Virus record (IMG/VR): IMGVR_UViG_3300031344_000002
Coordinates: 154,382-218,381 of that record
Reading direction: 5' to 3' (one strand)
Length of the DNA stretch: 64,000 bases
A model generated the notes under the pieces. The model worked only from the letters and a program-made list of their open reading frames with translations. It ran no database searches and was not told the DNA's origin. Within the stretch, counting starts at the first letter, position 1, and each line of letters begins with the position of its first letter. Shown here piece by piece: positions 1 through 64,000 of the stretch. Made by a program: the position numbers and the translations under genes.

Positions 1-330
1 AATACTTATAAAGTAAATCATTGTAATTCTTGTGGTAATGAATGGGAAATGTATAAAACCAAACCAATTTCACGAACTAATATATTAAATGTTGCTTTTA
101 AATATTTGAAAGAAATATTGGAAGACCCAGAAAAAAATAAACAAGATTATAAAATGGAAGCCATACAGGTTTTTGAAAATTCATATGCAGAAACATTGTA
201 TGAACTTAATGTATGGGTGAGAACTGATATTAAATTATCTGTTTTAAGAAAACATTATAAATCAGTATATGACAAATATATATTTCCACAAGTTTCTCAA
301 TCATTTGTTGATAAATATATTAAAGAATGA
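1..330 (+). CDS. Hypothetical protein, 5' end outside the window
   Basis: Frame is open from base 1 (NTYKVNHCNSCGNEWEM...) into ORF 49..330 and contains a CxxC. Confidence 0.7.
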   Translation, partial: NTYKVNHCNSCGNEWEMYKTKPISRTNILNVAFKYLKEILEDPEKNKQDYKMEAIQVFENSYAETLYELNVWVRTDIKLSVLRKHYKSVYDKYIFPQVSQSFVDKYIKE

Positions 331-366
331 TAATATTGAAATAATAATATTTAAAAATAATTTTTT

Positions 367-780
367 ATGGAAAATAAAGAAATAAAGATTAACGTACCTG
401 ATGGGTTTGAAATTGATAAAGATAATTCTACTTTTGAATTAATTAAATTCAAACCTGTTGTAAATAAAGAAGATAATAAATCCAAAGAAATGTCGGATTT
501 ATTATTCTCAATGTTTAATAACACTGTGTGCAAAATTACTGGTGAAAAAGAAATAACTTATTATAAATTAAATGGATATAATCCAAATTCTGATGATAAT
601 GAGTGGTTATTTCAACAGGATTGGAAAAACGGTAGATTATGGGTAAAATATTCACTTATTTGGAAGGTTTTTGAAGAAAGATTTGGTCTTAACTACGACC
701 AAATCAGAGATTTCATTCAAGATTGGGTGGAAACCAACCTAAATTGGAAGGGTTTAACACCAATTCAAGGCGGATATTGA
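367..780 (+). CDS. Uncharacterised phage protein whose C-terminus (VETNLNWKGLTP) is encoded by repeat 1 of the array
   Basis: 137-aa ORF; codons 727-762 coincide with repeat 1; the TGA stop (778-780) lies in spacer 1. Confidence 0.85.
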   Translation: MENKEIKINVPDGFEIDKDNSTFELIKFKPVVNKEDNKSKEMSDLLFSMFNNTVCKITGEKEITYYKLNGYNPNSDDNEWLFQQDWKNGRLWVKYSLIWKVFEERFGLNYDQIRDFIQDWVETNLNWKGLTPIQGGY

Positions 781-959
781 CGACAGCAAAAGGTGGAAAC
801 CAACCTAAATTGGAAGGGTTTAACACCGTTGCCAGTAATGCCCTTGCGGAACTATATGGTGGAAACCAACCTAAATTGGAAGGGTTTAACACCAGAAAAG
901 GATAACTGGTTTTCCTATTGTTTGGTGGAAACCAACCTAAATTGGAAGGGTTTAACACC
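726..959 (+). CRISPR. CRISPR-like mini-array: 4 identical 36-bp repeats, 3 unique 30-bp spacers, no cas genes in window
   Basis: GGTGGAAACCAACCTAAATTGGAAGGGTTTAACACC at 726-761, 792-827, 858-893, 924-959. Spacers 762-791, 828-857, 894-923 are each exactly 30 bp. Paired termini GGTG/CACC and inner stem AAAC/GTTT. The 36/30 geometry and paired ends resemble type VI-B repeats. Confidence 0.85.
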
Positions 960-986
960 AGATAAATAAATTAATAAGAAAAAATT

Positions 987-1551
987 ATGAATAAAATTAT
1001 ATTAAAAATAATTGATAAAAAAATAGTTGAAAAGGATTTCAGTTTGATAACTAAAAAGTTTGAAACTATTGAAGAACAAATTATAGAAACGAAAAAAATG
1101 TATGAATTTGAGAATGATAAAATTCAAATGAATAAAATTATTAAACAAATAAAAAAAATATAAAATTAAAACTATGCAATATCCTTTTGAATTTAGAGAA
1201 TTATTATTAACTGATTTACTTCTTAAAGAATTTGGATTTGTTAAATGGACAGATGATTGTGGAGATTCTAATCATTGTTCAATAACACTTGCAGGGGTGA
1301 AAATTGAAATTCATGAGACCGATGAATTAAGTGATGGTGGTGTAGGTAGTTATGCAGAACCTGAATATTCTTCTGCACATTTTACTGATAAAAATTTTTA
1401 TCCAATATATTTTCTTCATGATTTATATGAATATATGATATCATTTAAAAATGAAGATGTTATATCAGAATTTTTAAAATTATGTAAAAAGAATAATATG
1501 TATAATTATATTGAAACATATATTAATTATAAAACAACATCAAAAAAATAA
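987..1551 (+). CDS. Two hypothetical proteins (987..1163; 1174..1551)
   Basis: Co-oriented, closely packed ORFs; no motif recognised. Confidence 0.6.
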
Positions 1552-43646: not shown

Positions 43647-45965
43647 TTAAAATTCCATAACCACTTGTAAGATAGTAATTAACTTATCATCAAAATTTTC
43701 CATTCTATAAGGTAAATTAATATACTGTAAAACTTTTTCATTCTTTGCTTGTAATGCCAAAACTTCATCAATTTGTTTTTCCAATTTCTTTTGTGCTGCA
43801 GTTATTTTTATATTTGACAGGTCAAAATATGTAGATAAATATGGTTGAATATTAGCAATCTTATTTTCTCTACTTTTTGCAGGAATTGCAACAATACCAG
43901 CTTTAACATCATTGATTTTCTTACCCCATTTAGCATTTATCATAACAAATGATTTGTTGGTATATAATTCATGAATCTGATTGTATTTCTCAATAATCAT
44001 ATTGGTCTGAAAATACTGCATAATAGTATCAGATTTCCTATATAGTATCTTATTGAAGAAATCATCAACTTTATATGCTTTCTTGCAATATTGCATATAT
44101 TTAAGGTTATTTTCAGCCAATATAATGAACATTATACTTTTCTTACTTGCACCAGACCTTCTGTTTGAAAACTGATGGTCATAATCACTGTAATAAGTTA
44201 CCGGAATATCTTCACCAAATAATGTTGTGAATATTCTATATATTTCATGCAATTTGCTTTCATCAGCTTGATTACCATAGAAAATTGGACAATTATAATC
44301 AAAAAGACTTTCAAGTATAATTCTATATTTTGAATATCCACCTACGAACTTAACTGGAATGGTTGTATTGCGTAAGTCTTTGGACATTGAGTTTTTCTTC
44401 CTGTCAATCACAAAATCTTCTGGCACTTCCAATGTATCATAATTTTGTGCATGCTTACGTATAATCTCAAAATATTCTTCTTGCATTTCAAGTAATGATT
44501 GCATATAAGTTGTTGGTTTGCCTTTATCATCACATGTACTAGTAATTTGTGTATGAAAAAGGTCAGCAACATCATTTTGAATAAGTGAAGATGAATTACT
44601 AATGATATTGTTTTTTTCAATAATATGATATGTTTCGTACAAAGACTTTAAATATGCTTGCTTAACAATCTTGCGTACAAACATATCTTCAATATATAAT
44701 AAGTTTTTATTGTTATGTAATTCATCATAACCACCATCAAATCCATTACTAGTGCTGCTCCAACGACTTTTACGAGGTTTCTTACCATAAATACGAGATT
44801 TAAAAAAGAACTTGAATAAATGCTTATCAGAAGGCATTTTCATAAAACCATATTTGAAATTTGGAAAATCAACATCAGATTGTTTAATAAGTTTGCCAGT
44901 ATTAATACTACTACCATTACTAAAATTCAATACTCCAAAATTTTGTTTTACACTAAAGTATTCTTCTAATGTCTGGACATTCTGATATTGTTTTGAAATT
45001 AAAGCAATAATTTCTTTCTTAGCTGCTTCAAGTTTTTTCTTTAATATTTTAATCGTGTTCTCATCGTAATCCAGAGTTTCACGACTTATATTTACACCTA
45101 CTTCACCAACTTCAAGTTTTAATGCAATTGGAAGTTGATAATCACTTGAACTTAAATTAAGTATATTATAATCTATAGGATATGCAACTTTACCTAAACA
45201 TACATGCATGATAGTACCATAATCATCACCTCTGAATAAGAAAGATTTTCCACGAATGATTTGATATTTATTTGTCAGGGTTTTATCATAGCGAGTACTA
45301 TTATCATCATCTTCGTCAAATCCTTCGAAAACAACATTTTCAAAATAATAGAGTTGACGTACCATTTCTTTTGTAAATGTCTGCAGGTCTTTTTCTAATA
45401 CAGGTATACGAACTTCTGTGCCATTGTGTTCGTCAGTTTTCTCGCTGTGAAGTAATGATATTATAGGAGATTTTTTACTTTCATATATTTGATATGTATA
45501 TTTGATATTATCAAATATTGTAATAATAAAATAAGAATTATCATATTCACCTTCTCCAAAACCTGTGCTACGCTTGTAAGCCAGAGGACTCTTACTGCCT
45601 AACCCCCATTGACCGATTTGTTGAATATCTTCACGTTTTGTACTACTGAACATAACTGAAAATACATTATCAATTCTTTCTGTAGACATACCTACGCCAT
45701 AATCAATAAAAGAAACATAATAATTATTTGCTTGTTTATCAAAAATTTTCTTAATTATAACCGGAGTTTTAACACCAGCTTCAACATGACTATCAAAACA
45801 ATTTGAAGTTATTTCACGTACAACACTACCAATAGGATTGGTGTAAATGTTTTTTGAAAACATTTGAAAAATAATTGTTGCAGAATCTTTTGCTAATGTA
45901 ATATTCTTTTCTACTGTAGTTGTTTGTGTTTCAACATCTGAATAACTATTAACATTTAATTTCAT
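43647..45965 (-). CDS. rIIA: rIIA-like protein with N-terminal GHKL (HATPase_c) domain
   Basis: REITSNCFDSH, IDYGVGMS, STKR..IGQWGLGSKS, NGTEVRIPV; 772 aa, upstream of rIIB-like gene. Confidence 0.8.
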   Translation of the reverse strand: MKLNVNSYSDVETQTTTVEKNITLAKDSATIIFQMFSKNIYTNPIGSVVREITSNCFDSHVEAGVKTPVIIKKIFDKQANNYYVSFIDYGVGMSTERIDNVFSVMFSSTKREDIQQIGQWGLGSKSPLAYKRSTGFGEGEYDNSYFIITIFDNIKYTYQIYESKKSPIISLLHSEKTDEHNGTEVRIPVLEKDLQTFTKEMVRQLYYFENVVFEGFDEDDDNSTRYDKTLTNKYQIIRGKSFLFRGDDYGTIMHVCLGKVAYPIDYNILNLSSSDYQLPIALKLEVGEVGVNISRETLDYDENTIKILKKKLEAAKKEIIALISKQYQNVQTLEEYFSVKQNFGVLNFSNGSSINTGKLIKQSDVDFPNFKYGFMKMPSDKHLFKFFFKSRIYGKKPRKSRWSSTSNGFDGGYDELHNNKNLLYIEDMFVRKIVKQAYLKSLYETYHIIEKNNIISNSSSLIQNDVADLFHTQITSTCDDKGKPTTYMQSLLEMQEEYFEIIRKHAQNYDTLEVPEDFVIDRKKNSMSKDLRNTTIPVKFVGGYSKYRIILESLFDYNCPIFYGNQADESKLHEIYRIFTTLFGEDIPVTYYSDYDHQFSNRRSGASKKSIMFIILAENNLKYMQYCKKAYKVDDFFNKILYRKSDTIMQYFQTNMIIEKYNQIHELYTNKSFVMINAKWGKKINDVKAGIVAIPAKSRENKIANIQPYLSTYFDLSNIKITAAQKKLEKQIDEVLALQAKNEKVLQYINLPYRMENFDDKLITILQVVMEF

Positions 45966-51193: not shown

Positions 51194-52180
51194 TTATTCA
51201 TGTAATTCACGATATTTATTATTATGTGAAATGCAAACATCAAGGCAATTTTTACGGCATATATCATCTTTATAGCAATCATGGTTTTTAAACCATTCTA
51301 AGCGTTCTAGTCTCATATTTTCTGAAATCCTACCGATTGGCTCACCCTTTTCTCTCATGTAAATAACACAAGGAAAATGATAATCTCCGGCAATAACAGA
51401 ATCATCTAAAACTATTGCACATTTATTATAATCACTTTCACACATTCCTCTCACATTTTTGCCATTAGCAAAATTATTTATTCTATATTTCAAAATAGGA
51501 TGCGCATTAATTATTCCTTCTTCAACTTCATTAAGTCTTGGTATTGGTATATTCCACTGAGCAGCAGAAATAATACGAATATCTGCCACACCCAATTTAT
51601 GGGCAAATCTTATCGTTTCAATAGTTTTATCAATATTTTCTGGAGTTAATACAACACCAACAGTAACATAAGTTAATTTGGATATTGCTTTAATATTATC
51701 AACTACTTTAAACCAAGAATCCTTAATACCACCAGCCATTTTATCGCCATCATCAGCACAACAAGCATCTAATGATATTGAGAAATCATTACAACCAGCA
51801 TTAATAAGTGCCATATATAATTCAATTTTATTTGAACCATTAGTTGATATTGCAATTCTATTTATACCTTTATATTTAGCATAAGTAATTATTTCCACAA
51901 TATTTTTATGTAATGTTGGTTCACCGCCAGAAAATCTTATATTTTCTAATGGAATATCTTTACACCACAAATCAATATTATGTTTAATTTCTTCTAATGA
52001 AAGTTCTTTAATTTTTCTCTGTCCATATATTTCAGCTTTTAAACCTCTACAATAATTACAACGAAAATTACAATATTCGGTTATAATCATTTCACATCTT
52101 TTCATTTGAGATGTTATTGATACATTTCTCACTCTTTCATCAGATAATGTATAAAACCCAATTTCTTTTAAATTCATCAT
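51194..52180 (-). CDS. Radical SAM protein with Cys-rich C-terminus
   Basis: CNFRCNYC, IRFSGGEPTLH, ISTNGS; distal C...PC...C...C..VC. Confidence 0.9.
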   Translation of the reverse strand: MMNLKEIGFYTLSDERVRNVSITSQMKRCEMIITEYCNFRCNYCRGLKAEIYGQRKIKELSLEEIKHNIDLWCKDIPLENIRFSGGEPTLHKNIVEIITYAKYKGINRIAISTNGSNKIELYMALINAGCNDFSISLDACCADDGDKMAGGIKDSWFKVVDNIKAISKLTYVTVGVVLTPENIDKTIETIRFAHKLGVADIRIISAAQWNIPIPRLNEVEEGIINAHPILKYRINNFANGKNVRGMCESDYNKCAIVLDDSVIAGDYHFPCVIYMREKGEPIGRISENMRLERLEWFKNHDCYKDDICRKNCLDVCISHNNKYRELHE

Positions 52181-52485: not shown

Positions 52486-52594
52486 GTGTAATGATTATAT
52501 GTTTTAATTATAATACGAAAATTATTAAATTTTGTTGCAAATATATAAAAATAATTTAAATAATAGTGGTTAAATCTAAATATTTATATTATAT

Positions 52595-55339
52595 TTGCAG
52601 AAGAAAATAAAAACTATGAAAACGAATAACGAAATTGTTACTATTAAACTAAATGATACGGTAAAAACAAAACATGGTATTGGTCTTGTTGTAGATGTTA
52701 TAGAATGGAACGATGGTATTACAAATCATATTGAATATGATGTTGAAACTCAGATTGGTAGTTATAGATTAATGAGAAGCGAAATTGAAAAATAAATTAA
52801 AATAATAAAATTAAATTATGGAAAATGAAACAAAAACTAACATACCTGATGGGTTTGAATTTGTTAACCCATGACCCTGTGGAAACTAATCTAAATTTGA
52901 AGTGTTTAATACCACAAATTTGTTCGGTTATACTTCCTAAATCCGTGGAACTAAAATAATTAAAAATAAATTATATATGGAAAAAGAAGATTTAATACTA
53001 TGTGAATGTGGTTCTCCTGAACATCAAATTATTATTCAAAAGGACGAAGAATTTAAAGACAGAATGATTTATTTGCAAATTCATTTAAGAACTTACAACA
53101 ATTTCTTTAAAAGAATTTGGATTGCAACTAAATACATCTTTGGTTATAAGTGTAGATATGGAAATTGGGATGAATTTATTCTCACAACAAATAATTATCA
53201 ACCAATGAAAAATGCTATTGAATTTTTAGAAAACGATATAAACAAAAATGAAAACGATATTTAAAACAATCATAAAAAATGCACTATTAATAATTATGGC
53301 TATCGTAACAACAATAGGACTGTTATCAACAGGATATTTTTTAATTTTTATTGAGTGTAAAATATATACCCTAATAAGTTTTATTATTACTTGTGCTGCC
53401 ATATCAGTAATGGAATACATTAATTTCGATAATAAAGAAAAAATCTTTAAAAAATTTTAAATTATGAAAGCAGAAGATATATTAAAAATTGACTGGAAAA
53501 CCACATCGTTAATAGCTATTGATGAATGTAGAATGGGATGTGATGGAAGACCAACATTAACCATTGGTCGTTCTTATCATCCAACTCATTATAATACAAG
53601 CTGGATAAGAATTTTTGATGATTATAATGAAGAACATCATTTCGAATATGATACACTTCAAAATTATTTTAAAATTGTGGCTAATGAAAATTTAGAAAAC
53701 ATATGTACGGCAAGTAAAATTAATGTATTAGAAAACCTAAAATGTGCTGTAGGATTTGATGCAAACAATACTTATCCCGCATTATTTCAACACTTAGGTT
53801 ATAGAAAATTAATTGCCGAACAACTATTAAGAGGTGGTGAAACAAATAAAATGAAAGAACTTGAAGAATTGTATGAACAAGTCAATATTAAAATAAAATT
53901 AATACTAGGACTACTATAATATGAATGTTGATAAAGTAAATATAAAAGATTGCCATCAGAATGCTTGCGCAAATTTCTTAATTGAAGAACATACGATTGG
54001 TGATTTAAGAGATGAAGCAGATTTTGATAATGTAGTTTATCATGCAAAAAAATCATTAATGTTTGCAAAAGACTTAATATTAAATATTGATGGAACTAAT
54101 GAGGAAAAGGCAAAATTTATTGATGATGTAATTCTGGATTATGATAAGTTTAAAGTAAATGGGCAAAGTAAAGAAGAAGTTTGTCCTAACTGTGGTTCAA
54201 AATTAAAACCTTCAATGTATGCATATATAAACGTTCAGTGTACAAAATGCGATTATAAAAGATAAAATTATGAAAGTAAATATAAATGAAATAATTGAAT
54301 GTGGTCATAAATTATATTATGACATCAATCCAAATAGTGAAATGGATGTGCCTTCTATGTTCTATGAACGATTAGAAAAAGAATGGGTAAAATGGAAAGA
54401 AAGTGGAAGCGAATTATCATTCTATGAATATTGTAAGCACAGCATATCTGATGTTGATGATTCATTACCTACTGATATTGAAATGGACGAACAAATTTTA
54501 AAAATAATGAATGAAAATTTGGTTGCTGGTACTGTTGCTGAAAATACAGAAGGAATTATTTGTAATAAATTTGCTACATCATTAAAAATTGTTCATTACA
54601 TAAAAGAATTAATGAAAAAATAAATAATAATAATATGGATATTAAAGAACCAGATTTAACGGCTGGCGGTATGGCATAGTTATTTTTTCTATCACAAAAC
54701 TAAATTAAAAGATATGGCTTACGATATTTATGGACAAAACTTAGCGAGCGGACACTGTGAGGTACATCCGTGGGTTGCGGAAAGTTATCCGTGCAGTTTA
54801 TGTTATGCAGAAAGCAAACCTAAACACGACCCAAGACAAAAGGAGTATGAACGTGCGGAGGCAGAACACTACGCTGAAATGGAGCGAGCGCACTACGAAG
54901 AACTGGCAAGAAAAAATAATTTGCTATACCGCTTGTTATGCTATGTGGCACTTGCAGTAAGTAAATTAAACGAGCGAGTTCAAAAATATAAGGAAAAAAT
55001 GTTAAGCAGAACGGTTGGTAGATTAATTCATAAACAATGATAAAAGAAGAAAAATCAACACAAGAAATAACAATTCATCACAAATATTGTGATGATTGCG
55101 GAGTGGAAATAAAGCGTGGTATGGCTTGTTCTGCTGCAAAGTGTGAGATGTGTGGTAAGGACTTGTGTGATAAGTGTGTTGAACATGAAGATAATGGCTC
55201 TGGTGATTACAGAATCGTTTATTGTTCTAGGTGTTGGCGTATTGGTCTCGAATATTTTGAAAAAATAAAAATATATGTAGATGAAATAGAAAATTTAAAT
55301 ACTGAATGGTTAAGAAAATGCCTTGATAAACAAGTGTAA
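52595..55339 (+). CDS. Plus-strand island of small hypotheticals (52595, 52977, 53248, 53464, 53921, 54270, 54714, 55037 Cys-rich)
   Basis: Co-oriented ORFs after TATATTTG box 52590-52597, divergent from the 52.5 kb promoter. Confidence 0.7.
52818..52959 (+). pseudogene. Internally deleted paralog of 367..780 retaining start region and repeat-spacer-partial repeat
   Basis: MENETKTNIPDGFEF (cf. MENKEIKINVPDGFEI), TGA at 52872-52874, then in the +1 frame VETNLNLKCLIP-QICSVILPKS-VELK*. Confidence 0.8.
52878..52950 (+). CRISPR. Degenerate repeat + 30-bp spacer + truncated repeat
   Basis: TGTGGAAACTAATCTAAATTTGAAGTGTTTAATACC (52878-52913) is 30/36 identical to the array repeat; exactly 30 bp later (52944) comes CGTGGAA. 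Confidence 0.7.
54655..54941. repeat. attC-like imperfect inverted arms
   Basis: TTTAACGGCTGGCGGTATGGCATAGTTATTT (54655-54685) vs AAATAATTTGCTATACCGCTTGTTATGC (54914-54941). Confidence 0.5.
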
Positions 55340-60563: not shown

Positions 60564-61802
60564 ATGATTAAAGCATATAAATATCGAATCATGCCAACTA
60601 AGGCACAACAAACACTAATCAATAAACATATTGGTAGTTGTCGATTTGTATATAATCTTGCTTTAGAAACCAAACAAATTGCTTATGCGGGTAATAAAAT
60701 TAATTTATCTTGTTTTGACCTAATTAAACAACTTCCTGCTTTAAAAAAAGAATGTGAATGGTTAAAAGAAATTAATGCACAATCATTGCAACAATCAATA
60801 ACACATTTAGATAATGCTTTTACTCGATTCTTCAAAGGACAATCAGATTTTCCTAATTTTAAAAAGAAATGTGCTAAACAATCATTTAATATACCACAAA
60901 GTGTAATTCTTGATTTTGATAATAATAAACTTATCATACCCAAATTTAGAAAAGGAATTAAAATAATTTTACATAGAACTTTTAAAGGTACTATCAGACA
61001 AGCAACTATAAGCAAAACTCCAACAGGTAAATATTTTGTAAGTATATTAGTTGAAAATAATGTTGTGATACCAAATAAAGTAAATATTGAAAGTAATAAT
61101 AGTATTGGTATTGATTTAGGTCTTAAATCATTCTTAATAACTTCTGAAGGTGAGACATTTAATAATCCCAAATATTTAAGAAAATCACAATCTAAATTAA
61201 AATATATACAAAGTAAATATTCAAAATATAAAGGCAAAAAAACAAAACATAAATTAGCTCTTTTGCATGAAAGTGTTGCTAATCAAAGAAAAGATTTTTT
61301 AAATAAAATATCAATTAAACTTATTAGTGAGAACCAAACAATATGTTTAGAAGACTTGAATATTAAAGGTATGTCAGCAAGATGTAAACCAAAACAAGAC
61401 GAAAATGGTAGATATTTACCTAACAGTCAAAGTGCAAAATCAGGACTTAATAAGTCTATAACTGATGCTGGTTGGGGTATGTTTGTTGATATGCTTAAAT
61501 ATAAAGCAGAATGGCAAGGTAAAAACATATTACAAATTGGTAGATTTGAACCATCAAGTAAAACTTGTAATGTTTGTGGCAATATTAATAAAGAGTTAAC
61601 TCTTGATAATAGAGTTTGGACTTGTAGTAATTGTAATACTGTTCTTGATAGAGATGTTAATGCAGCAATTAATATTAAAAATTTTGCTTTAAGAAATTAC
61701 ATTAAATTGTGTAAGGAACTTACACTTGAAAATCATAGCGAACTGCCTACATTAGTGGGAGTGATGACCTATGAAGCCAACAAGTCTTTAGCTTGTAGGT
61801 AG
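60564..61802 (+). CDS. tnpB: RNA-guided endonuclease TnpB (IS200/IS605 family)
   Basis: HTH_OrfB start (KAYKYRI.PT..Q...I....G.CRFVYN); RuvC D (GIDLG), E (LEDL), D (DRDVNAA); zinc finger CNVC/CSNC. Confidence 0.95.
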   Translation: MIKAYKYRIMPTKAQQTLINKHIGSCRFVYNLALETKQIAYAGNKINLSCFDLIKQLPALKKECEWLKEINAQSLQQSITHLDNAFTRFFKGQSDFPNFKKKCAKQSFNIPQSVILDFDNNKLIIPKFRKGIKIILHRTFKGTIRQATISKTPTGKYFVSILVENNVVIPNKVNIESNNSIGIDLGLKSFLITSEGETFNNPKYLRKSQSKLKYIQSKYSKYKGKKTKHKLALLHESVANQRKDFLNKISIKLISENQTICLEDLNIKGMSARCKPKQDENGRYLPNSQSAKSGLNKSITDAGWGMFVDMLKYKAEWQGKNILQIGRFEPSSKTCNVCGNINKELTLDNRVWTCSNCNTVLDRDVNAAINIKNFALRNYIKLCKELTLENHSELPTLVGVMTYEANKSLACR

Positions 61803-62703: not shown

Positions 62704-63999
62704 TTAATTTCTACTATTCCAAAAATAATCCAATTCTTTTGGTATTTCATTTGGTCTATGATATTTAGCTGCTTCTATACAATCATTAAAACTACTGTCA
62801 GTTGGTATTAAATAATTTTGTCCAGTTGAAGGACATGTCATCTTTAACCAAGCTAATGCTGCAGGACTATTACCATTTAAATCCTCTTCTTCATTAAATA
62901 CTTCTTTAGTCTTATATAATATAAATTCTTCATCACCATGTGCATGTTTAATAGTTTTCCTATCTACTTCAACAGCATCAAGAAATTTCATCATTTCTCC
63001 CTCACCTTTGCTTTCAATTATTTCATAAATACCACCCCTAACGTCTTCATTGGTTTCATTTATAAAATCTGTTTTAATTAATGAATTGTTATTTGCTTTT
63101 TCAAATATCAATTTCGGCATTTGTCTTCCATGAATATAATAACAATCAAACTTTGTTTCTTCAATTGTACATCCCCATTCAACAGCTAAACCATTTGTAT
63201 TATGTAAATTATTGTTATTATCTCTATATATTTTCTTTGGATATTTTGAAACAACACATAATAATTCAGAAAAAATTGCTGAATACACACCAGAATCTAA
63301 ATATAAATCATTCCAAGAATTTAATGTAATTCCAATTTCTCCACAATCAATTTTAAATTCATCTTTAATAAATTTCCACCAAGCCAATGAAACATTAGAA
63401 TAAACATTTGCAGTAAATAAATATGAATTATTATAATTCTTTAGTGTATTGTTTAGTGTATTCTTTAGTGTATTGCGTAGTGTATTGCCTAGTGTATTGC
63501 CTAGTGTATTGCTTAGTGTATTGCGTAGTGTATTGTGTAGTGTATTGTCTAGTGTATTGTCTAGTGTATTGTCTAGTGTATTGCGTAGTGTATTGTATAG
63601 TGTATTGCGTAGTGTATTGAGTAGTGTATTGTATAGTGTATTGAGTAGTGTATTGTATAGTGTATTGCCTAGTGTATTGCCTAGTGTATTGTCTAGTGTA
63701 TTGAGTAGTGTATTGTCTAGTGTATTGCCTAGTGTATTGCCTAGTGTATTGTCTAGTGTATTGTGTAGTGTATTGTCTAGTGTATTGTCTAGTGTATTGA
63801 GTAGTGTATTGTATAGTGTATTGTCTAGTGTATTGAGTAGTGTATTGCGTAGTGTATTGTATAGTGTATTGTCTAGTGTATTGAGTAGTGTATTGTATAG
63901 TGTATTGAGTAGTGTATTGTATAGTGTATTGCCTAGTGTATTGCCTAGTGTATTGTCTAGTGTATTGAGTAGTGTATTGTCTAGTGTATTGCCTAGTGT
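62704..63999 (-). CDS. Tandem-repeat (xNTL)n protein with DUF6745-like C-terminal domain; start outside window
   Basis: Minus frame is open from 63999 through the repeats into NYNNSYLFTANVYSNVSLAWWKF and ORF 62704..63387. Confidence 0.8.
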   Translation of the reverse strand, partial: TLGNTLDNTLLNTLDNTLGNTLGNTLYNTLLNTLYNTLLNTLDNTLYNTLRNTLLNTLDNTLYNTLLNTLDNTLDNTLHNTLDNTLGNTLGNTLDNTLLNTLDNTLGNTLGNTLYNTLLNTLYNTLLNTLRNTLYNTLRNTLDNTLDNTLDNTLHNTLRNTLSNTLGNTLGNTLRNTLKNTLNNTLKNYNNSYLFTANVYSNVSLAWWKFIKDEFKIDCGEIGITLNSWNDLYLDSGVYSAIFSELLCVVSKYPKKIYRDNNNNLHNTNGLAVEWGCTIEETKFDCYYIHGRQMPKLIFEKANNNSLIKTDFINETNEDVRGGIYEIIESKGEGEMMKFLDAVEVDRKTIKHAHGDEEFILYKTKEVFNEEEDLNGNSPAALAWLKMTCPSTGQNYLIPTDSSFNDCIEAAKYHRPNEIPKELDYFWNSRN

Positions 64000-64000
64000 A
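63442..64000. repeat. 12-bp tandem repeat TAGTGTATTGnn, at least 46 units, runs off the window
   Basis: Direct reading; apart from one unit at 63454, only the last two bases of each unit vary. Confidence 0.98.

What the first reader, a model, noticed from the sequence alone, without database searches (positions are those of the whole stretch)
52818..52959. Second locus keeps repeat-30 bp-repeat after losing almost all of the gene
Seen: a start region clearly paralogous to gene 367 joins, out of frame, a 36-mer 30/36 identical to the array repeat, then exactly 30 unrelated bases, then the start of another repeat (CGTGGAA). Two of the five in-codon changes are synonymous (ACC>ACT, AAC>AAT), and the AAAC/GTTT stem survives. 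So the repeat evolved as coding sequence of a gene family, and the 30-bp insertion geometry recurs with a diverged repeat, which a single recent capture of a host array would not explain. It sits second in the transcript from the 52590 promoter. Inference: spacer-bearing tails are a family property; this copy may survive as an RNA-only unit (single guide or repeat decoy comparable to RNA anti-CRISPRs).
Basis: partly seen in the sequence, partly recalled or inferred. Interest (0 to 1): 0.85.

Follow-up and report, generated by a model that had tools for sequence, protein, structure and literature searches.

The report
Fossil copy of gene-tail CRISPR array
The flagged 142 bases are a decayed, internally deleted copy of a phage gene whose last 12 codons double as the first repeat of a CRISPR-like array. 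The copy itself looks dead, but the gene family behind it is large, undescribed and unusual.

Summary
Window 52818-52959 holds 18 codons paralogous to the start of gene 367, then a stop. Next come a 36-mer matching the array repeat at 30/36 (shuffles reach at most 24/36), exactly 30 unrelated bases, and about 16 bases of a second repeat.

It is a fossil. The two "synonymous" changes are inherited from a variant repeat in an intact array of the same 218-kb phage contig. The four changes private to this copy are all G/C>T, and three hit invariant residues (W, G, T). The repeat hairpin is lost, the 30-mer lacks the downstream repeat that a guide-then-repeat crRNA (Cas13b or Cas9) needs, and two relatives lack the locus.

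Gene 367 belongs to an unannotated phage superfamily (729 clusters). Its C-terminal peptide is under amino-acid constraint while synonymous sites drift. The coding tail is the first repeat of arrays of 2-8 copies with 27-33-nt (mostly 30) unrelated spacers. Distal repeats are degenerate and arrays differ at the gene-proximal end.

No cas gene, host repeat or protospacer was found. The builder and the function of the arrays remain inferred.

The parts
52590..52599 (+). Promoter-like motif TATATTTGCA (Bacteroidota-type -7 box TAnnTTTG) heading the unit of ORF 52616, locus 2 and ORF 52977
   Evidence: Five copies in the window, all intergenic. The same motif precedes the orthologue of ORF 52977 in L135 and L136. 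Assignment to the Bacteroidota -7 consensus rests on established knowledge.
52818..52874 (+). Truncated 5' end of a family gene: 18 codons plus TGA, paralogous to codons 1-16 of gene 367
   Evidence: tblastn 73% over 15 aa; 19-base identical DNA core.
52878..52913 (+). Degenerate 36-nt repeat: 30/36 to the window's array repeat, 32/36 to the ACT-AAT variant of array C
   Evidence: Private changes are G1>T, TGG>TTG, GGT>TGT, ACA>ATA. Fold is -1.8 kcal/mol.
52914..52943 (+). 30-nt spacer-like insert, 30% GC, no match anywhere searched
52944..52959 (+). Truncated second repeat: about 16 nt, 13/16 with a 1-nt deletion, ending in TAA
52825..52959 (+). Mechanical 44-aa ORF that reads the degenerate repeat in the family's frame (VETNLNLKCLIP). 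Probably not a gene.
   Evidence: No homologue in the window beyond the repeat itself.
367..780 (+). Intact family gene (137 aa). Its last 12 conserved codons (VETNLNWKGLTP) are repeat 1, and translation stops inside spacer 1.
   Evidence: AlphaFold model has pLDDT 81.9 with the last helix running into the repeat-encoded residues. No Pfam, NCBIfam, PHROG or PADLOC match.
726..959 (+). Array B: four identical 36-nt repeats (726, 792, 858, 924) and three 30-nt spacers (762-791, 828-857, 894-923)
   Evidence: An otherwise identical contig (L137) lacks exactly the two gene-proximal units, 132 bp.

Best explanation
Locus 2 is a dead relic of a gene-plus-array unit.

How the relic arose (inferred). 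A paralogue carrying the ACT-AAT repeat variant sat in a variable slot behind the 52590 promoter. It lost nearly all of its coding body by internal deletion and lost the distal part of its array. It has since drifted under the genome's AT pressure. It is probably still transcribed passively with its neighbours. It has no sign of function as protein, guide or decoy.

The intact units, as shown.
- A small phage protein ends in a strongly conserved 12-residue peptide.
- The 36 bases from the third base of the preceding Trp codon to the second base of the final Pro codon are the first repeat of an array.
- Further units, each a copy of that very tail plus about 30 unrelated bases of higher GC, lie downstream.
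- The far repeat is degenerate.
- Related arrays share gene-distal spacers and differ at the gene-proximal end.

The intact units, as inferred.
- The units are added one at a time next to the gene tail by a CRISPR adaptation integrase with a 36+30 ruler. The likeliest candidate is the host's, of the Bacteroidota II-C/VI-B kind, which is known to work in trans on dissimilar repeats.
- The array is transcribed with the gene. Where the repeat still folds, as in this phage, it may load the host's Cas13b with phage-chosen or useless guides, for rivalry between phages or as a decoy.
For: Relic status:
- 30/36 match against a shuffle maximum of 24.
- The ACT-AAT variant is present in intact array C of the same contig.
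- The private changes are all G/C>T, and three hit invariant W127, G129 and T131.
- The fold is lost and the second repeat is truncated.
- The slot is empty in L135 and holds another ORF in L136.
- The repeat occurs in no other viral contig.

Coding constraint on the tail:
- Tail pN/pS is 0.11 with pS 0.48; body values are 0.51 and 0.54.
- Some family genes have the tail but no array: L008, L068, L070.

Array nature:
- Repeats within an array are 97.5% identical, while spacers are 27.7% identical, equal to random pairs.
- Spacer lengths are 27-33 nt, mostly 30, and include 29 and 31.
- Spacer GC is 0.355 against 0.262 for the genome, P = 1.5e-4.
- Terminal repeats are degenerate.
- Three independent pairs share only gene-distal spacers: window/L137, L162/L156, L155/L160.
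- Each array copies its own gene's tail variant.
- The 22-residue period holds in 26 of 27 clusters with widely different tails.

Link to type VI-B:
- A verified Cas13b-adjacent array (L050; NF038190, E = 4.5e-154) has a 36-nt repeat and 30-nt spacers.
- That repeat matches ours at 22/36 in register, 13/27 outside the search seed (P = 0.007).
- Ten different phage tails score 18-22/36 against it, P < 0.003.
- VI-B arrays take spacers in trans from the II-C Cas1 despite different repeats and leaders, and are transcribed from the leader end (PMC8092290).
- A non-targeting crRNA competes for Cas13b and raised plaque formation about 1000-fold (PMC13187072).
Against: - No repeat of this kind was found in 185,579 species genomes.
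- No Cas13b homologue was found in about 1 Mb of fetched phage DNA, and no cas gene among the ten of the window's 13 ORFs of 250 aa or more scanned, plus the radical SAM ORF; two went unscanned.
- No protospacer was found in the window, the fetched loci, 50,697 phage records or IMG/VR (two spacer cores).
- Synonymous sites of the tail drift about as fast as the gene body. The hairpin is lost in several array-bearing relatives (L007, -1.3 kcal/mol). So no conserved RNA-level constraint is visible.
- Arrays form on tails whose DNA differs widely, which is hard to fit with a sequence-specific host integrase.
- Reverse complements of the tails match VI-B repeats almost as well, 16-21/36.
- In a second branch of the superfamily, spacers avoid in-frame stops (40 of 43). 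A pure non-coding array model does not predict this.
Confidence: 0.72

Rival explanations
1. Locus 2 is a working RNA-only unit. It would be a repeat decoy (RNA anti-CRISPR) or a single guide, kept after the gene was lost.
For: - It lies in a co-directional unit behind a recurrent promoter motif.
- One full-length repeat and the 30-nt geometry survive.
- Non-targeting crRNAs can blunt Cas13b defence.
- Solitary repeats act as anti-CRISPRs in other systems (PMC10651486).
Against: - The fold is -1.8 kcal/mol, no better than shuffles, against -8.3 to -10.9 for intact repeats.
- Private changes fall in both arms of the stems.
- The 30-mer has only about 16 nt of repeat on its 3' side, whereas Cas13b and Cas9 guides carry the repeat 3' of the spacer.
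- It is absent from the same slot in two relatives and from all other viral contigs.
- The same genome carries 16 intact repeats that would serve better.
Confidence: 0.07
2. The arrays are ordinary protein tandem repeats, a false-positive CRISPR. The 22-residue units would arise by duplication and the variable part would diverge.
For: - The unit is 66 nt, or 22 codons.
- The repeat is conserved as peptide.
- In one branch ORFs run through up to 8 units, and 40 of 43 spacers lack in-frame stops.
Against: - Repeats are 97.5% identical at DNA level, while inserts between them are no more alike than random pairs.
- 19 of 73 distinct spacers are not 30 nt (12 of 29 nt, 5 of 31, one each of 27 and 33); the 29- and 31-nt ones break the frame.
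- In the window's branch, stops occur in 13 of 30 spacers in the gene frame, the same as in other frames.
- Insert GC is far above the genome's.
- Relatives differ only at the gene-proximal end, and terminal repeats are degenerate.
Confidence: 0.08
3. A host CRISPR array was captured once and fused by chance to the end of a phage gene. The family then inherited it.
For: - Phage-borne mini-arrays with host-like repeats are known (PMC6858448).
- The 36/30 geometry and resemblance to VI-B repeats fit a host origin.
Against: - The tail peptide is conserved over a superfamily of 729 clusters, including genes with no array.
- Synonymous sites drift freely.
- Every array copies its own gene's tail variant, even very diverged ones such as L013.
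- No host genome holds the repeat.
Confidence: 0.06
4. The translated variable 10-residue pieces are the point. The gene would be a multi-core peptide precursor or display scaffold, with the DNA-level cassette insertion serving peptide diversity.
For: - Stop avoidance and codon-position periodicity occur in the frame set by the preceding repeat: 57 of 73 stop-free against 33.5 +/- 4.1 in shuffles, and chi-square P = 1.2e-5.
- ORFs span up to 8 units and keep a conserved end piece.
- Conserved flanks around hypervariable cores recall multi-core peptide precursors (own knowledge).
- A radical SAM gene lies 640 bp from locus 2.
Against: - The window's own branch shows no bias (17 of 30), and gene 367 stops inside spacer 1.
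- Frame-breaking spacers occur at the newest positions (L162, L141).
- The radical SAM protein is generic and is not linked to arrays in relatives.
- A simple filter against losing the conserved end piece explains the bias equally well.
Confidence: 0.07

Closest known systems
Virus-borne orphan mini-CRISPR arrays (Sulfolobales viruses, huge phages)
   Same: Short arrays in viral genomes without adjacent cas genes, thought to use the host's machinery (PMC6858448, PMC7162821).
   Different: There the repeats are non-coding copies of host repeats and the spacers hit rival viruses. Here the first repeat is the conserved coding end of a phage gene, no host repeat is known, and no spacer target was found.
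Solitary repeat units / RNA anti-CRISPRs (Racrs)
   Same: Phage-borne repeat mimics that could tie up Cas proteins. Locus 2 was proposed as one.
   Different: Racrs are non-coding, sit just behind a promoter, and are at least 90% identical to a known repeat. That survey found none for type VI and masked confident ORFs before searching, so gene-embedded repeats like these would be missed (PMC10651486).
Type VI-B (Cas13b) arrays of Bacteroidota with adaptation in trans by II-C Cas1-Cas2
   Same: 36-nt repeat and 30-nt spacers. Four-base complementary ends (GGTG..CACC against GTTG..CAAC, with a compensated second pair). A shared central TTGGAAGGGT. Transcription from the leader end. An acquisition complex that tolerates dissimilar repeats.
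   Different: No Cas13b or Cas1 found nearby, only 18-22/36 identity, and a hairpin not conserved across the family.
Neo-CRISPR arrays from off-target spacer integration (Nivala et al. 2018, as cited in bioRxiv 10.1101/148544)
   Same: New arrays seeded at a genomic sequence that happens to resemble a leader-repeat junction, with the duplicated 'repeat' being local sequence.
   Different: Those were seen in the E. coli chromosome under forced Cas1-Cas2 expression. Here it would be recurrent, in phage genomes, at one conserved coding site across a whole gene family.
TnpB/IscB guide RNAs overlapping the end of their own gene (own knowledge)
   Same: A nucleic-acid element shares sequence with the 3' coding end of the adjacent gene.
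   Different: The protein here has about 135 residues, no nuclease fold and no match in PDB or BFVD. The TnpB at 60564-61802 is unrelated to the arrays.

Membership tests
CRISPR array (generic) | Near-identical direct repeats of 23-50 nt separated by unique spacers of similar length | tested here: met
   Four exact 36-nt repeats with 30-nt spacers in the window. Over 33 arrays, repeats are 97.5% identical, spacers 27.7% (random level), and spacer lengths 27-33 nt. Locus 2 keeps one degenerate repeat, one 30-mer and a repeat stub.
CRISPR array (generic) | Polarity: new units at one end, old degenerate repeat at the other | tested here: met
   Terminal repeats are degenerate. Three pairs of related arrays share only gene-distal spacers.
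CRISPR array (generic) | Cas genes in cis, or a host system with the same repeat | tested here: not met
   No cas gene among the window ORFs scanned (11 of the 13 of 250 aa or more). No Cas13b in about 1 Mb of phage loci. Repeat absent from 185,579 species genomes. The host itself is unknown, so absence is not proof.
CRISPR array (generic) | Spacers match foreign genetic elements | tested here: inconclusive
   No match in the window, fetched loci, INPHARED or IMG/VR (two spacer cores). Spacer GC is foreign to the genome.
Type VI-B array | 36-nt repeat with paired ends forming one hairpin, and spacers of about 30 nt | tested here: inconclusive
   Met for this phage's repeats (-10.9 kcal/mol, terminal 4-bp stem). 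Not kept in array-bearing relatives (L007, -1.3). Identity to a verified VI-B repeat is 22/36.
Type VI-B array | Processed and used by Cas13b | not testable with these tools
   Needs the host, small-RNA sequencing and binding assays.
Solitary repeat unit / Racr (for locus 2) | Non-coding solitary repeat at least 90% identical to a known CRISPR repeat and folding like it | tested here: not met
   83% to the phage's own repeat (89% to the array C variant), no known cellular repeat, fold lost.
Protein tandem repeat | Whole unit homologous between copies, with length a multiple of three | tested here: not met
   Inserts are unrelated. 17 of 73 spacers are 29 or 31 nt.

The most novel reading that the evidence does not exclude
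A large, unannotated phage protein superfamily carries, as its conserved C-terminal coding sequence, a seed on which CRISPR-type repeat-spacer units are built again and again. In some branches they stay in frame and are translated.

Either phages have turned a coding tail into bait that recruits host adaptation and Cas13b-type effectors. Or a ruler-type insertion mechanism exists that does not depend on a host-matched repeat, possibly involving the protein itself.

Locus 2 would then be one of many births and deaths of such units.
Probability: 0.3. Interest if true: 0.9.

Novelty: new variant of a known kind. Interest (0 to 1): 0.7.

Why it matters
CRISPR repeats are treated as non-coding elements shaped by Cas binding. 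Here the repeat is a peptide-coding gene end that drifts at synonymous sites, yet it still nucleates arrays with the exact 36+30 geometry in hundreds of phage gene clusters.

If host integrases build these arrays, this is natural, recurrent off-target adaptation into phage genomes. It would also be a possible first case of type VI repeat mimicry by phages. The published survey of viral solitary repeats reported none for type VI and masked ORFs before searching.

If they do not, an unknown array-building mechanism exists.

Either way, the family gives a tractable system for asking how arrays are born. For the flagged locus itself the message is modest: it shows that such units also die.

Tried and rejected
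- Close relatives: megablast of both regions against 50,697 phage records gave nothing.
- Family in cultured phages: tblastn of four family proteins against the same records found no match to the core domain; only another N-terminal module matched.
- RNA families: Rfam gave nothing at gathering score over the whole window, and only noise at E <= 10 over the array.
- Protein families: Pfam, NCBIfam, PHROGs and PADLOC gave nothing for the family protein.
- Structure: a good model (pLDDT 81.9) had no informative match in PDB or BFVD.
- Host repeat: the first genome scan, with a permissive core, found nothing. The second, periodic scan found 45 loci, none with a similar repeat. It did yield a genuine Cas13b array as a yardstick.
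- Spacer targets: none found. One 27/29 hit to a microvirus lies in a repeat, not a spacer.
- Orthologous slot: the downstream gene is widespread (63 loci), but synteny is not kept. Two closer relatives show the slot empty or otherwise filled.
- Sigma-70 promoter and terminator scans: uninformative in this AT-rich DNA.
- Distant family DNA: an alignment-based fetch failed. One look-up returned no DNA. A periodic DNA pattern worked.
- Deletion junction: it could not be resolved by alignment.
Full report
**The source.** The window has 26% GC. It is the last 64 kb of a 218,381-bp viral contig, IMGVR_UViG_3300031344_000002. Gene 367 maps to contig position 154,748, so the window runs from 154,382 to the contig end. 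It encodes rIIA-like, helicase, AAA and radical SAM proteins and a TnpB. No cas gene appeared among the 11 of its 13 ORFs of 250 aa or more that were scanned. A recurrent intergenic motif, TATATTTGCA, fits the Bacteroidota -7 promoter box (established knowledge). The N-terminal module of gene 367 resembles DNA of a crAss-like phage. The host is therefore probably a Bacteroidota member, but this is inferred.

**The observation.**
- 52818-52874 holds 18 codons paralogous to the start of gene 367, then TGA.
- Three bases later, 52878-52913 matches the array repeat GGTGGAAACCAACCTAAATTGGAAGGGTTTAACACC at 30 of 36.
- This is the only such match in 64 kb on either strand. The best of 100 shuffles was 24.
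- Then come exactly 30 unrelated bases (52914-52943).
- Then about 16 bases of a second repeat follow, 13 of 16 with one deletion, ending at the TAA of 52957-52959.

**Where the locus came from.** The same contig holds three intact gene-plus-array units.
- Unit A lies just upstream of the window and has 6 repeats.
- Unit B is gene 367 with array 726-959 and has 4 repeats.
- Unit C lies near the contig start on the other strand and has 6 repeats.

Five of the six repeats of unit C carry ACT-AAT instead of ACC-AAC. These are the very two "synonymous" changes seen in locus 2. So locus 2 descends from a C-type repeat and differs from it at four positions.
- All four are G or C to T, the direction expected in a 26% GC genome.
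- The three in-codon changes replace W, G and T, which are invariant or nearly so in the family.
- The predicted hairpin falls from -8.3 or -10.9 kcal/mol to -1.8, no better than shuffles.

The exact degenerate repeat occurs in no other viral contig. Two relatives share the downstream gene at 77-82% identity behind the same promoter motif. One has nothing between promoter and gene. The other has an unrelated 144-residue ORF. The slot is variable and the locus is not conserved.

In guide-then-repeat systems such as Cas13b and Cas9, the repeat lies 3' of the spacer. The 30-mer here has only a stub there. I conclude that locus 2 is a fossil: an internally deleted paralogue with the remains of its array.

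**The gene family.** Gene 367 has no match in Pfam, NCBIfam, PHROGs or PADLOC. A confident model (pLDDT 81.9: one helix, a four-stranded sheet, two helices) has no informative structural neighbour.

Thirty close homologues come only from metagenomic contigs, several of them 218-365 kb long. Over the family the body falls to about 40% identity, while the end W-VETNLNWKGLTP stays nearly invariant.

At DNA level the tails differ almost only at synonymous sites.
- Over 15 distinct genes, the tail has pN/pS 0.11 with pS 0.48.
- The body has pN/pS 0.51 with pS 0.54.

The tail is thus held as a peptide, not as a nucleic-acid motif. Some genes have the tail and no array at all (L008, L068, L070). A profile search of 1.84 billion representative proteins finds 729 clusters at E <= 0.001. 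The best 148 nearly all end in a related tail.

**The arrays.** Each array repeats its own gene's tail variant, even strongly diverged ones such as L013, L066 and L007.
- Over 33 distinct arrays and 73 distinct spacers, repeats within an array are 97.5% identical.
- Spacers are 27.7% identical, the same as random pairs.
- Spacer lengths are 27-33 nt, with 54 of 30 nt, 12 of 29 and 5 of 31.
- The 13 spacers of this phage average 35.5% GC against 26.2% for the genome (P = 1.5e-4).
- Far-end repeats are degenerate.

Contig L137 is 100% identical to window 300-1080 but lacks exactly the two gene-proximal units of array B. L162/L156 and L155/L160 likewise share only gene-distal spacers.

These are the hallmarks of polarised, one-unit-at-a-time insertion with duplication of the adjacent repeat. 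That is how CRISPR adaptation works, and I know of no other process that gives this pattern.

Among 150 representative proteins, 27 carry a second in-frame copy of their own tail. It lies 22 residues downstream in 26 of them and 21 in one, although the tails differ widely.

**Link to known systems.** The unit of 36 + 30 nt is that of Bacteroidota type VI-B arrays. A periodic scan of cellular genomes returned a true example, L050, with Cas13b at E = 4.5e-154.
- Its repeat matches ours at 22 of 36 in register, 13 of 27 outside the search seed (P = 0.007).
- It has the same four-base terminal stem, with a compensated second pair.
- Ten different phage tails score 18-22 of 36 against it (P < 0.003). 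Their reverse complements score 16-21.

In Flavobacterium columnare, VI-B arrays acquire spacers through the II-C Cas1 despite different leaders and repeats (PMC8092290). Non-targeting crRNAs can starve Cas13b of useful guides (PMC13187072). This makes host-built arrays and a decoy or rivalry role plausible.

The weaknesses are plain.
- No cellular genome holds the repeat.
- No Cas13b lies in about 1 Mb of fetched phage DNA.
- No protospacer was found.
- The hairpin is not conserved in the family.

**An unexplained twist.** A second branch of the superfamily has tails like VEEHYK.GVTTT and an hhalign probability of 96.8% to the first. It carries arrays of 2-8 units in 26 IMG/VR loci.
- There, 40 of 43 spacers lack stops in the frame set by the preceding repeat. 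The other frames give 27 and 16.
- ORFs run through up to eight units.
- These ORFs end in a conserved piece made of two old degenerate repeats and an old spacer.
- The window's own branch shows no such bias, at 17 of 30.

A filter against losing the conserved end piece would explain the bias. So would a real use of the translated variable pieces. I cannot decide between them.

**Verdict.** The functional reading of this particular copy is not supported.

The locus is an ordinary pseudogene of an extraordinary family. Published surveys of viral repeat mimics found none for type VI and masked ORFs before searching (PMC10651486). I found no description of CRISPR-type arrays seeded on a conserved coding tail.

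Noticed in passing
window 60564-61802 (+): 412-residue RNA-guided endonuclease TnpB (NF040570, 306.8 bits; OrfB_IS605 and Cas12f1-like TNB domains) in a phage genome. It is flanked by two copies of the TATATTTGCA motif on the minus strand (61857, 62666).
   Followed up: partly
window 63442-64000: 12-bp unit TAGTGTATTGTC repeated 46.6 times (89% matches). It runs to the end of the window, which is also the end of the 218-kb contig.
   Followed up: no
window 51194-52180 (-): Radical SAM protein (MoaA-like, below all NCBIfam cut-offs) 640 bp from locus 2 on the other strand. No link to the arrays was seen in relatives.
   Followed up: partly
window 43647-45965 (-): 772-residue HATPase_c protein of the T4 rIIA kind. 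In relatives L005 and L068 it sits next to rIIB and a few kb from family genes.
   Followed up: no
window 367-460 and 52818-52874: The first 30 residues or so (MENKEIKINVPDGFEIDKDNSTFE.IKFKP) form a module shared with other protein families that have different C-terminal parts (P0027-P0030). At DNA level (76%) it also matches a crAss-like phage, cr116_1.
   Followed up: partly
L137 versus window 300-1080: An otherwise identical contig from another sample lacks exactly 132 bp, the two gene-proximal repeat-spacer units of array B. The array therefore changes faster than any flanking base.
   Followed up: yes
L138-L140 (P0003 locus): The gene's own tail has mutated (GGGAAAAAC.., GKTNLNWKGLTP) while downstream repeats keep GGTGGAAAC. 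The array is identical in three samples, so this array looks frozen after the seed changed.
   Followed up: partly
L010 3617-3652 (array C of the same contig): One repeat of the ACC-AAC type sits among five ACT-AAT repeats, which suggests exchange between arrays of one genome.
   Followed up: no
L141-L166 (IMG/VR loci): In a second branch of the superfamily the spacers avoid in-frame stops (40 of 43) and show codon-position periodicity. ORFs of up to 290 residues run through eight repeat-spacer units to a conserved end piece.
   Followed up: partly
P0034 (760 aa), P0054 (588 aa): Long representative proteins contain five separate matches to the family profile, so tandem fusions of the whole domain also exist.
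   Followed up: no
window 52977-53264 (+): The 95-residue gene just downstream of locus 2 matches PHROG 12660 ('virion structural protein', E = 3.5e-10). It has relatives in 63 viral contigs with no conserved neighbours.
   Followed up: partly
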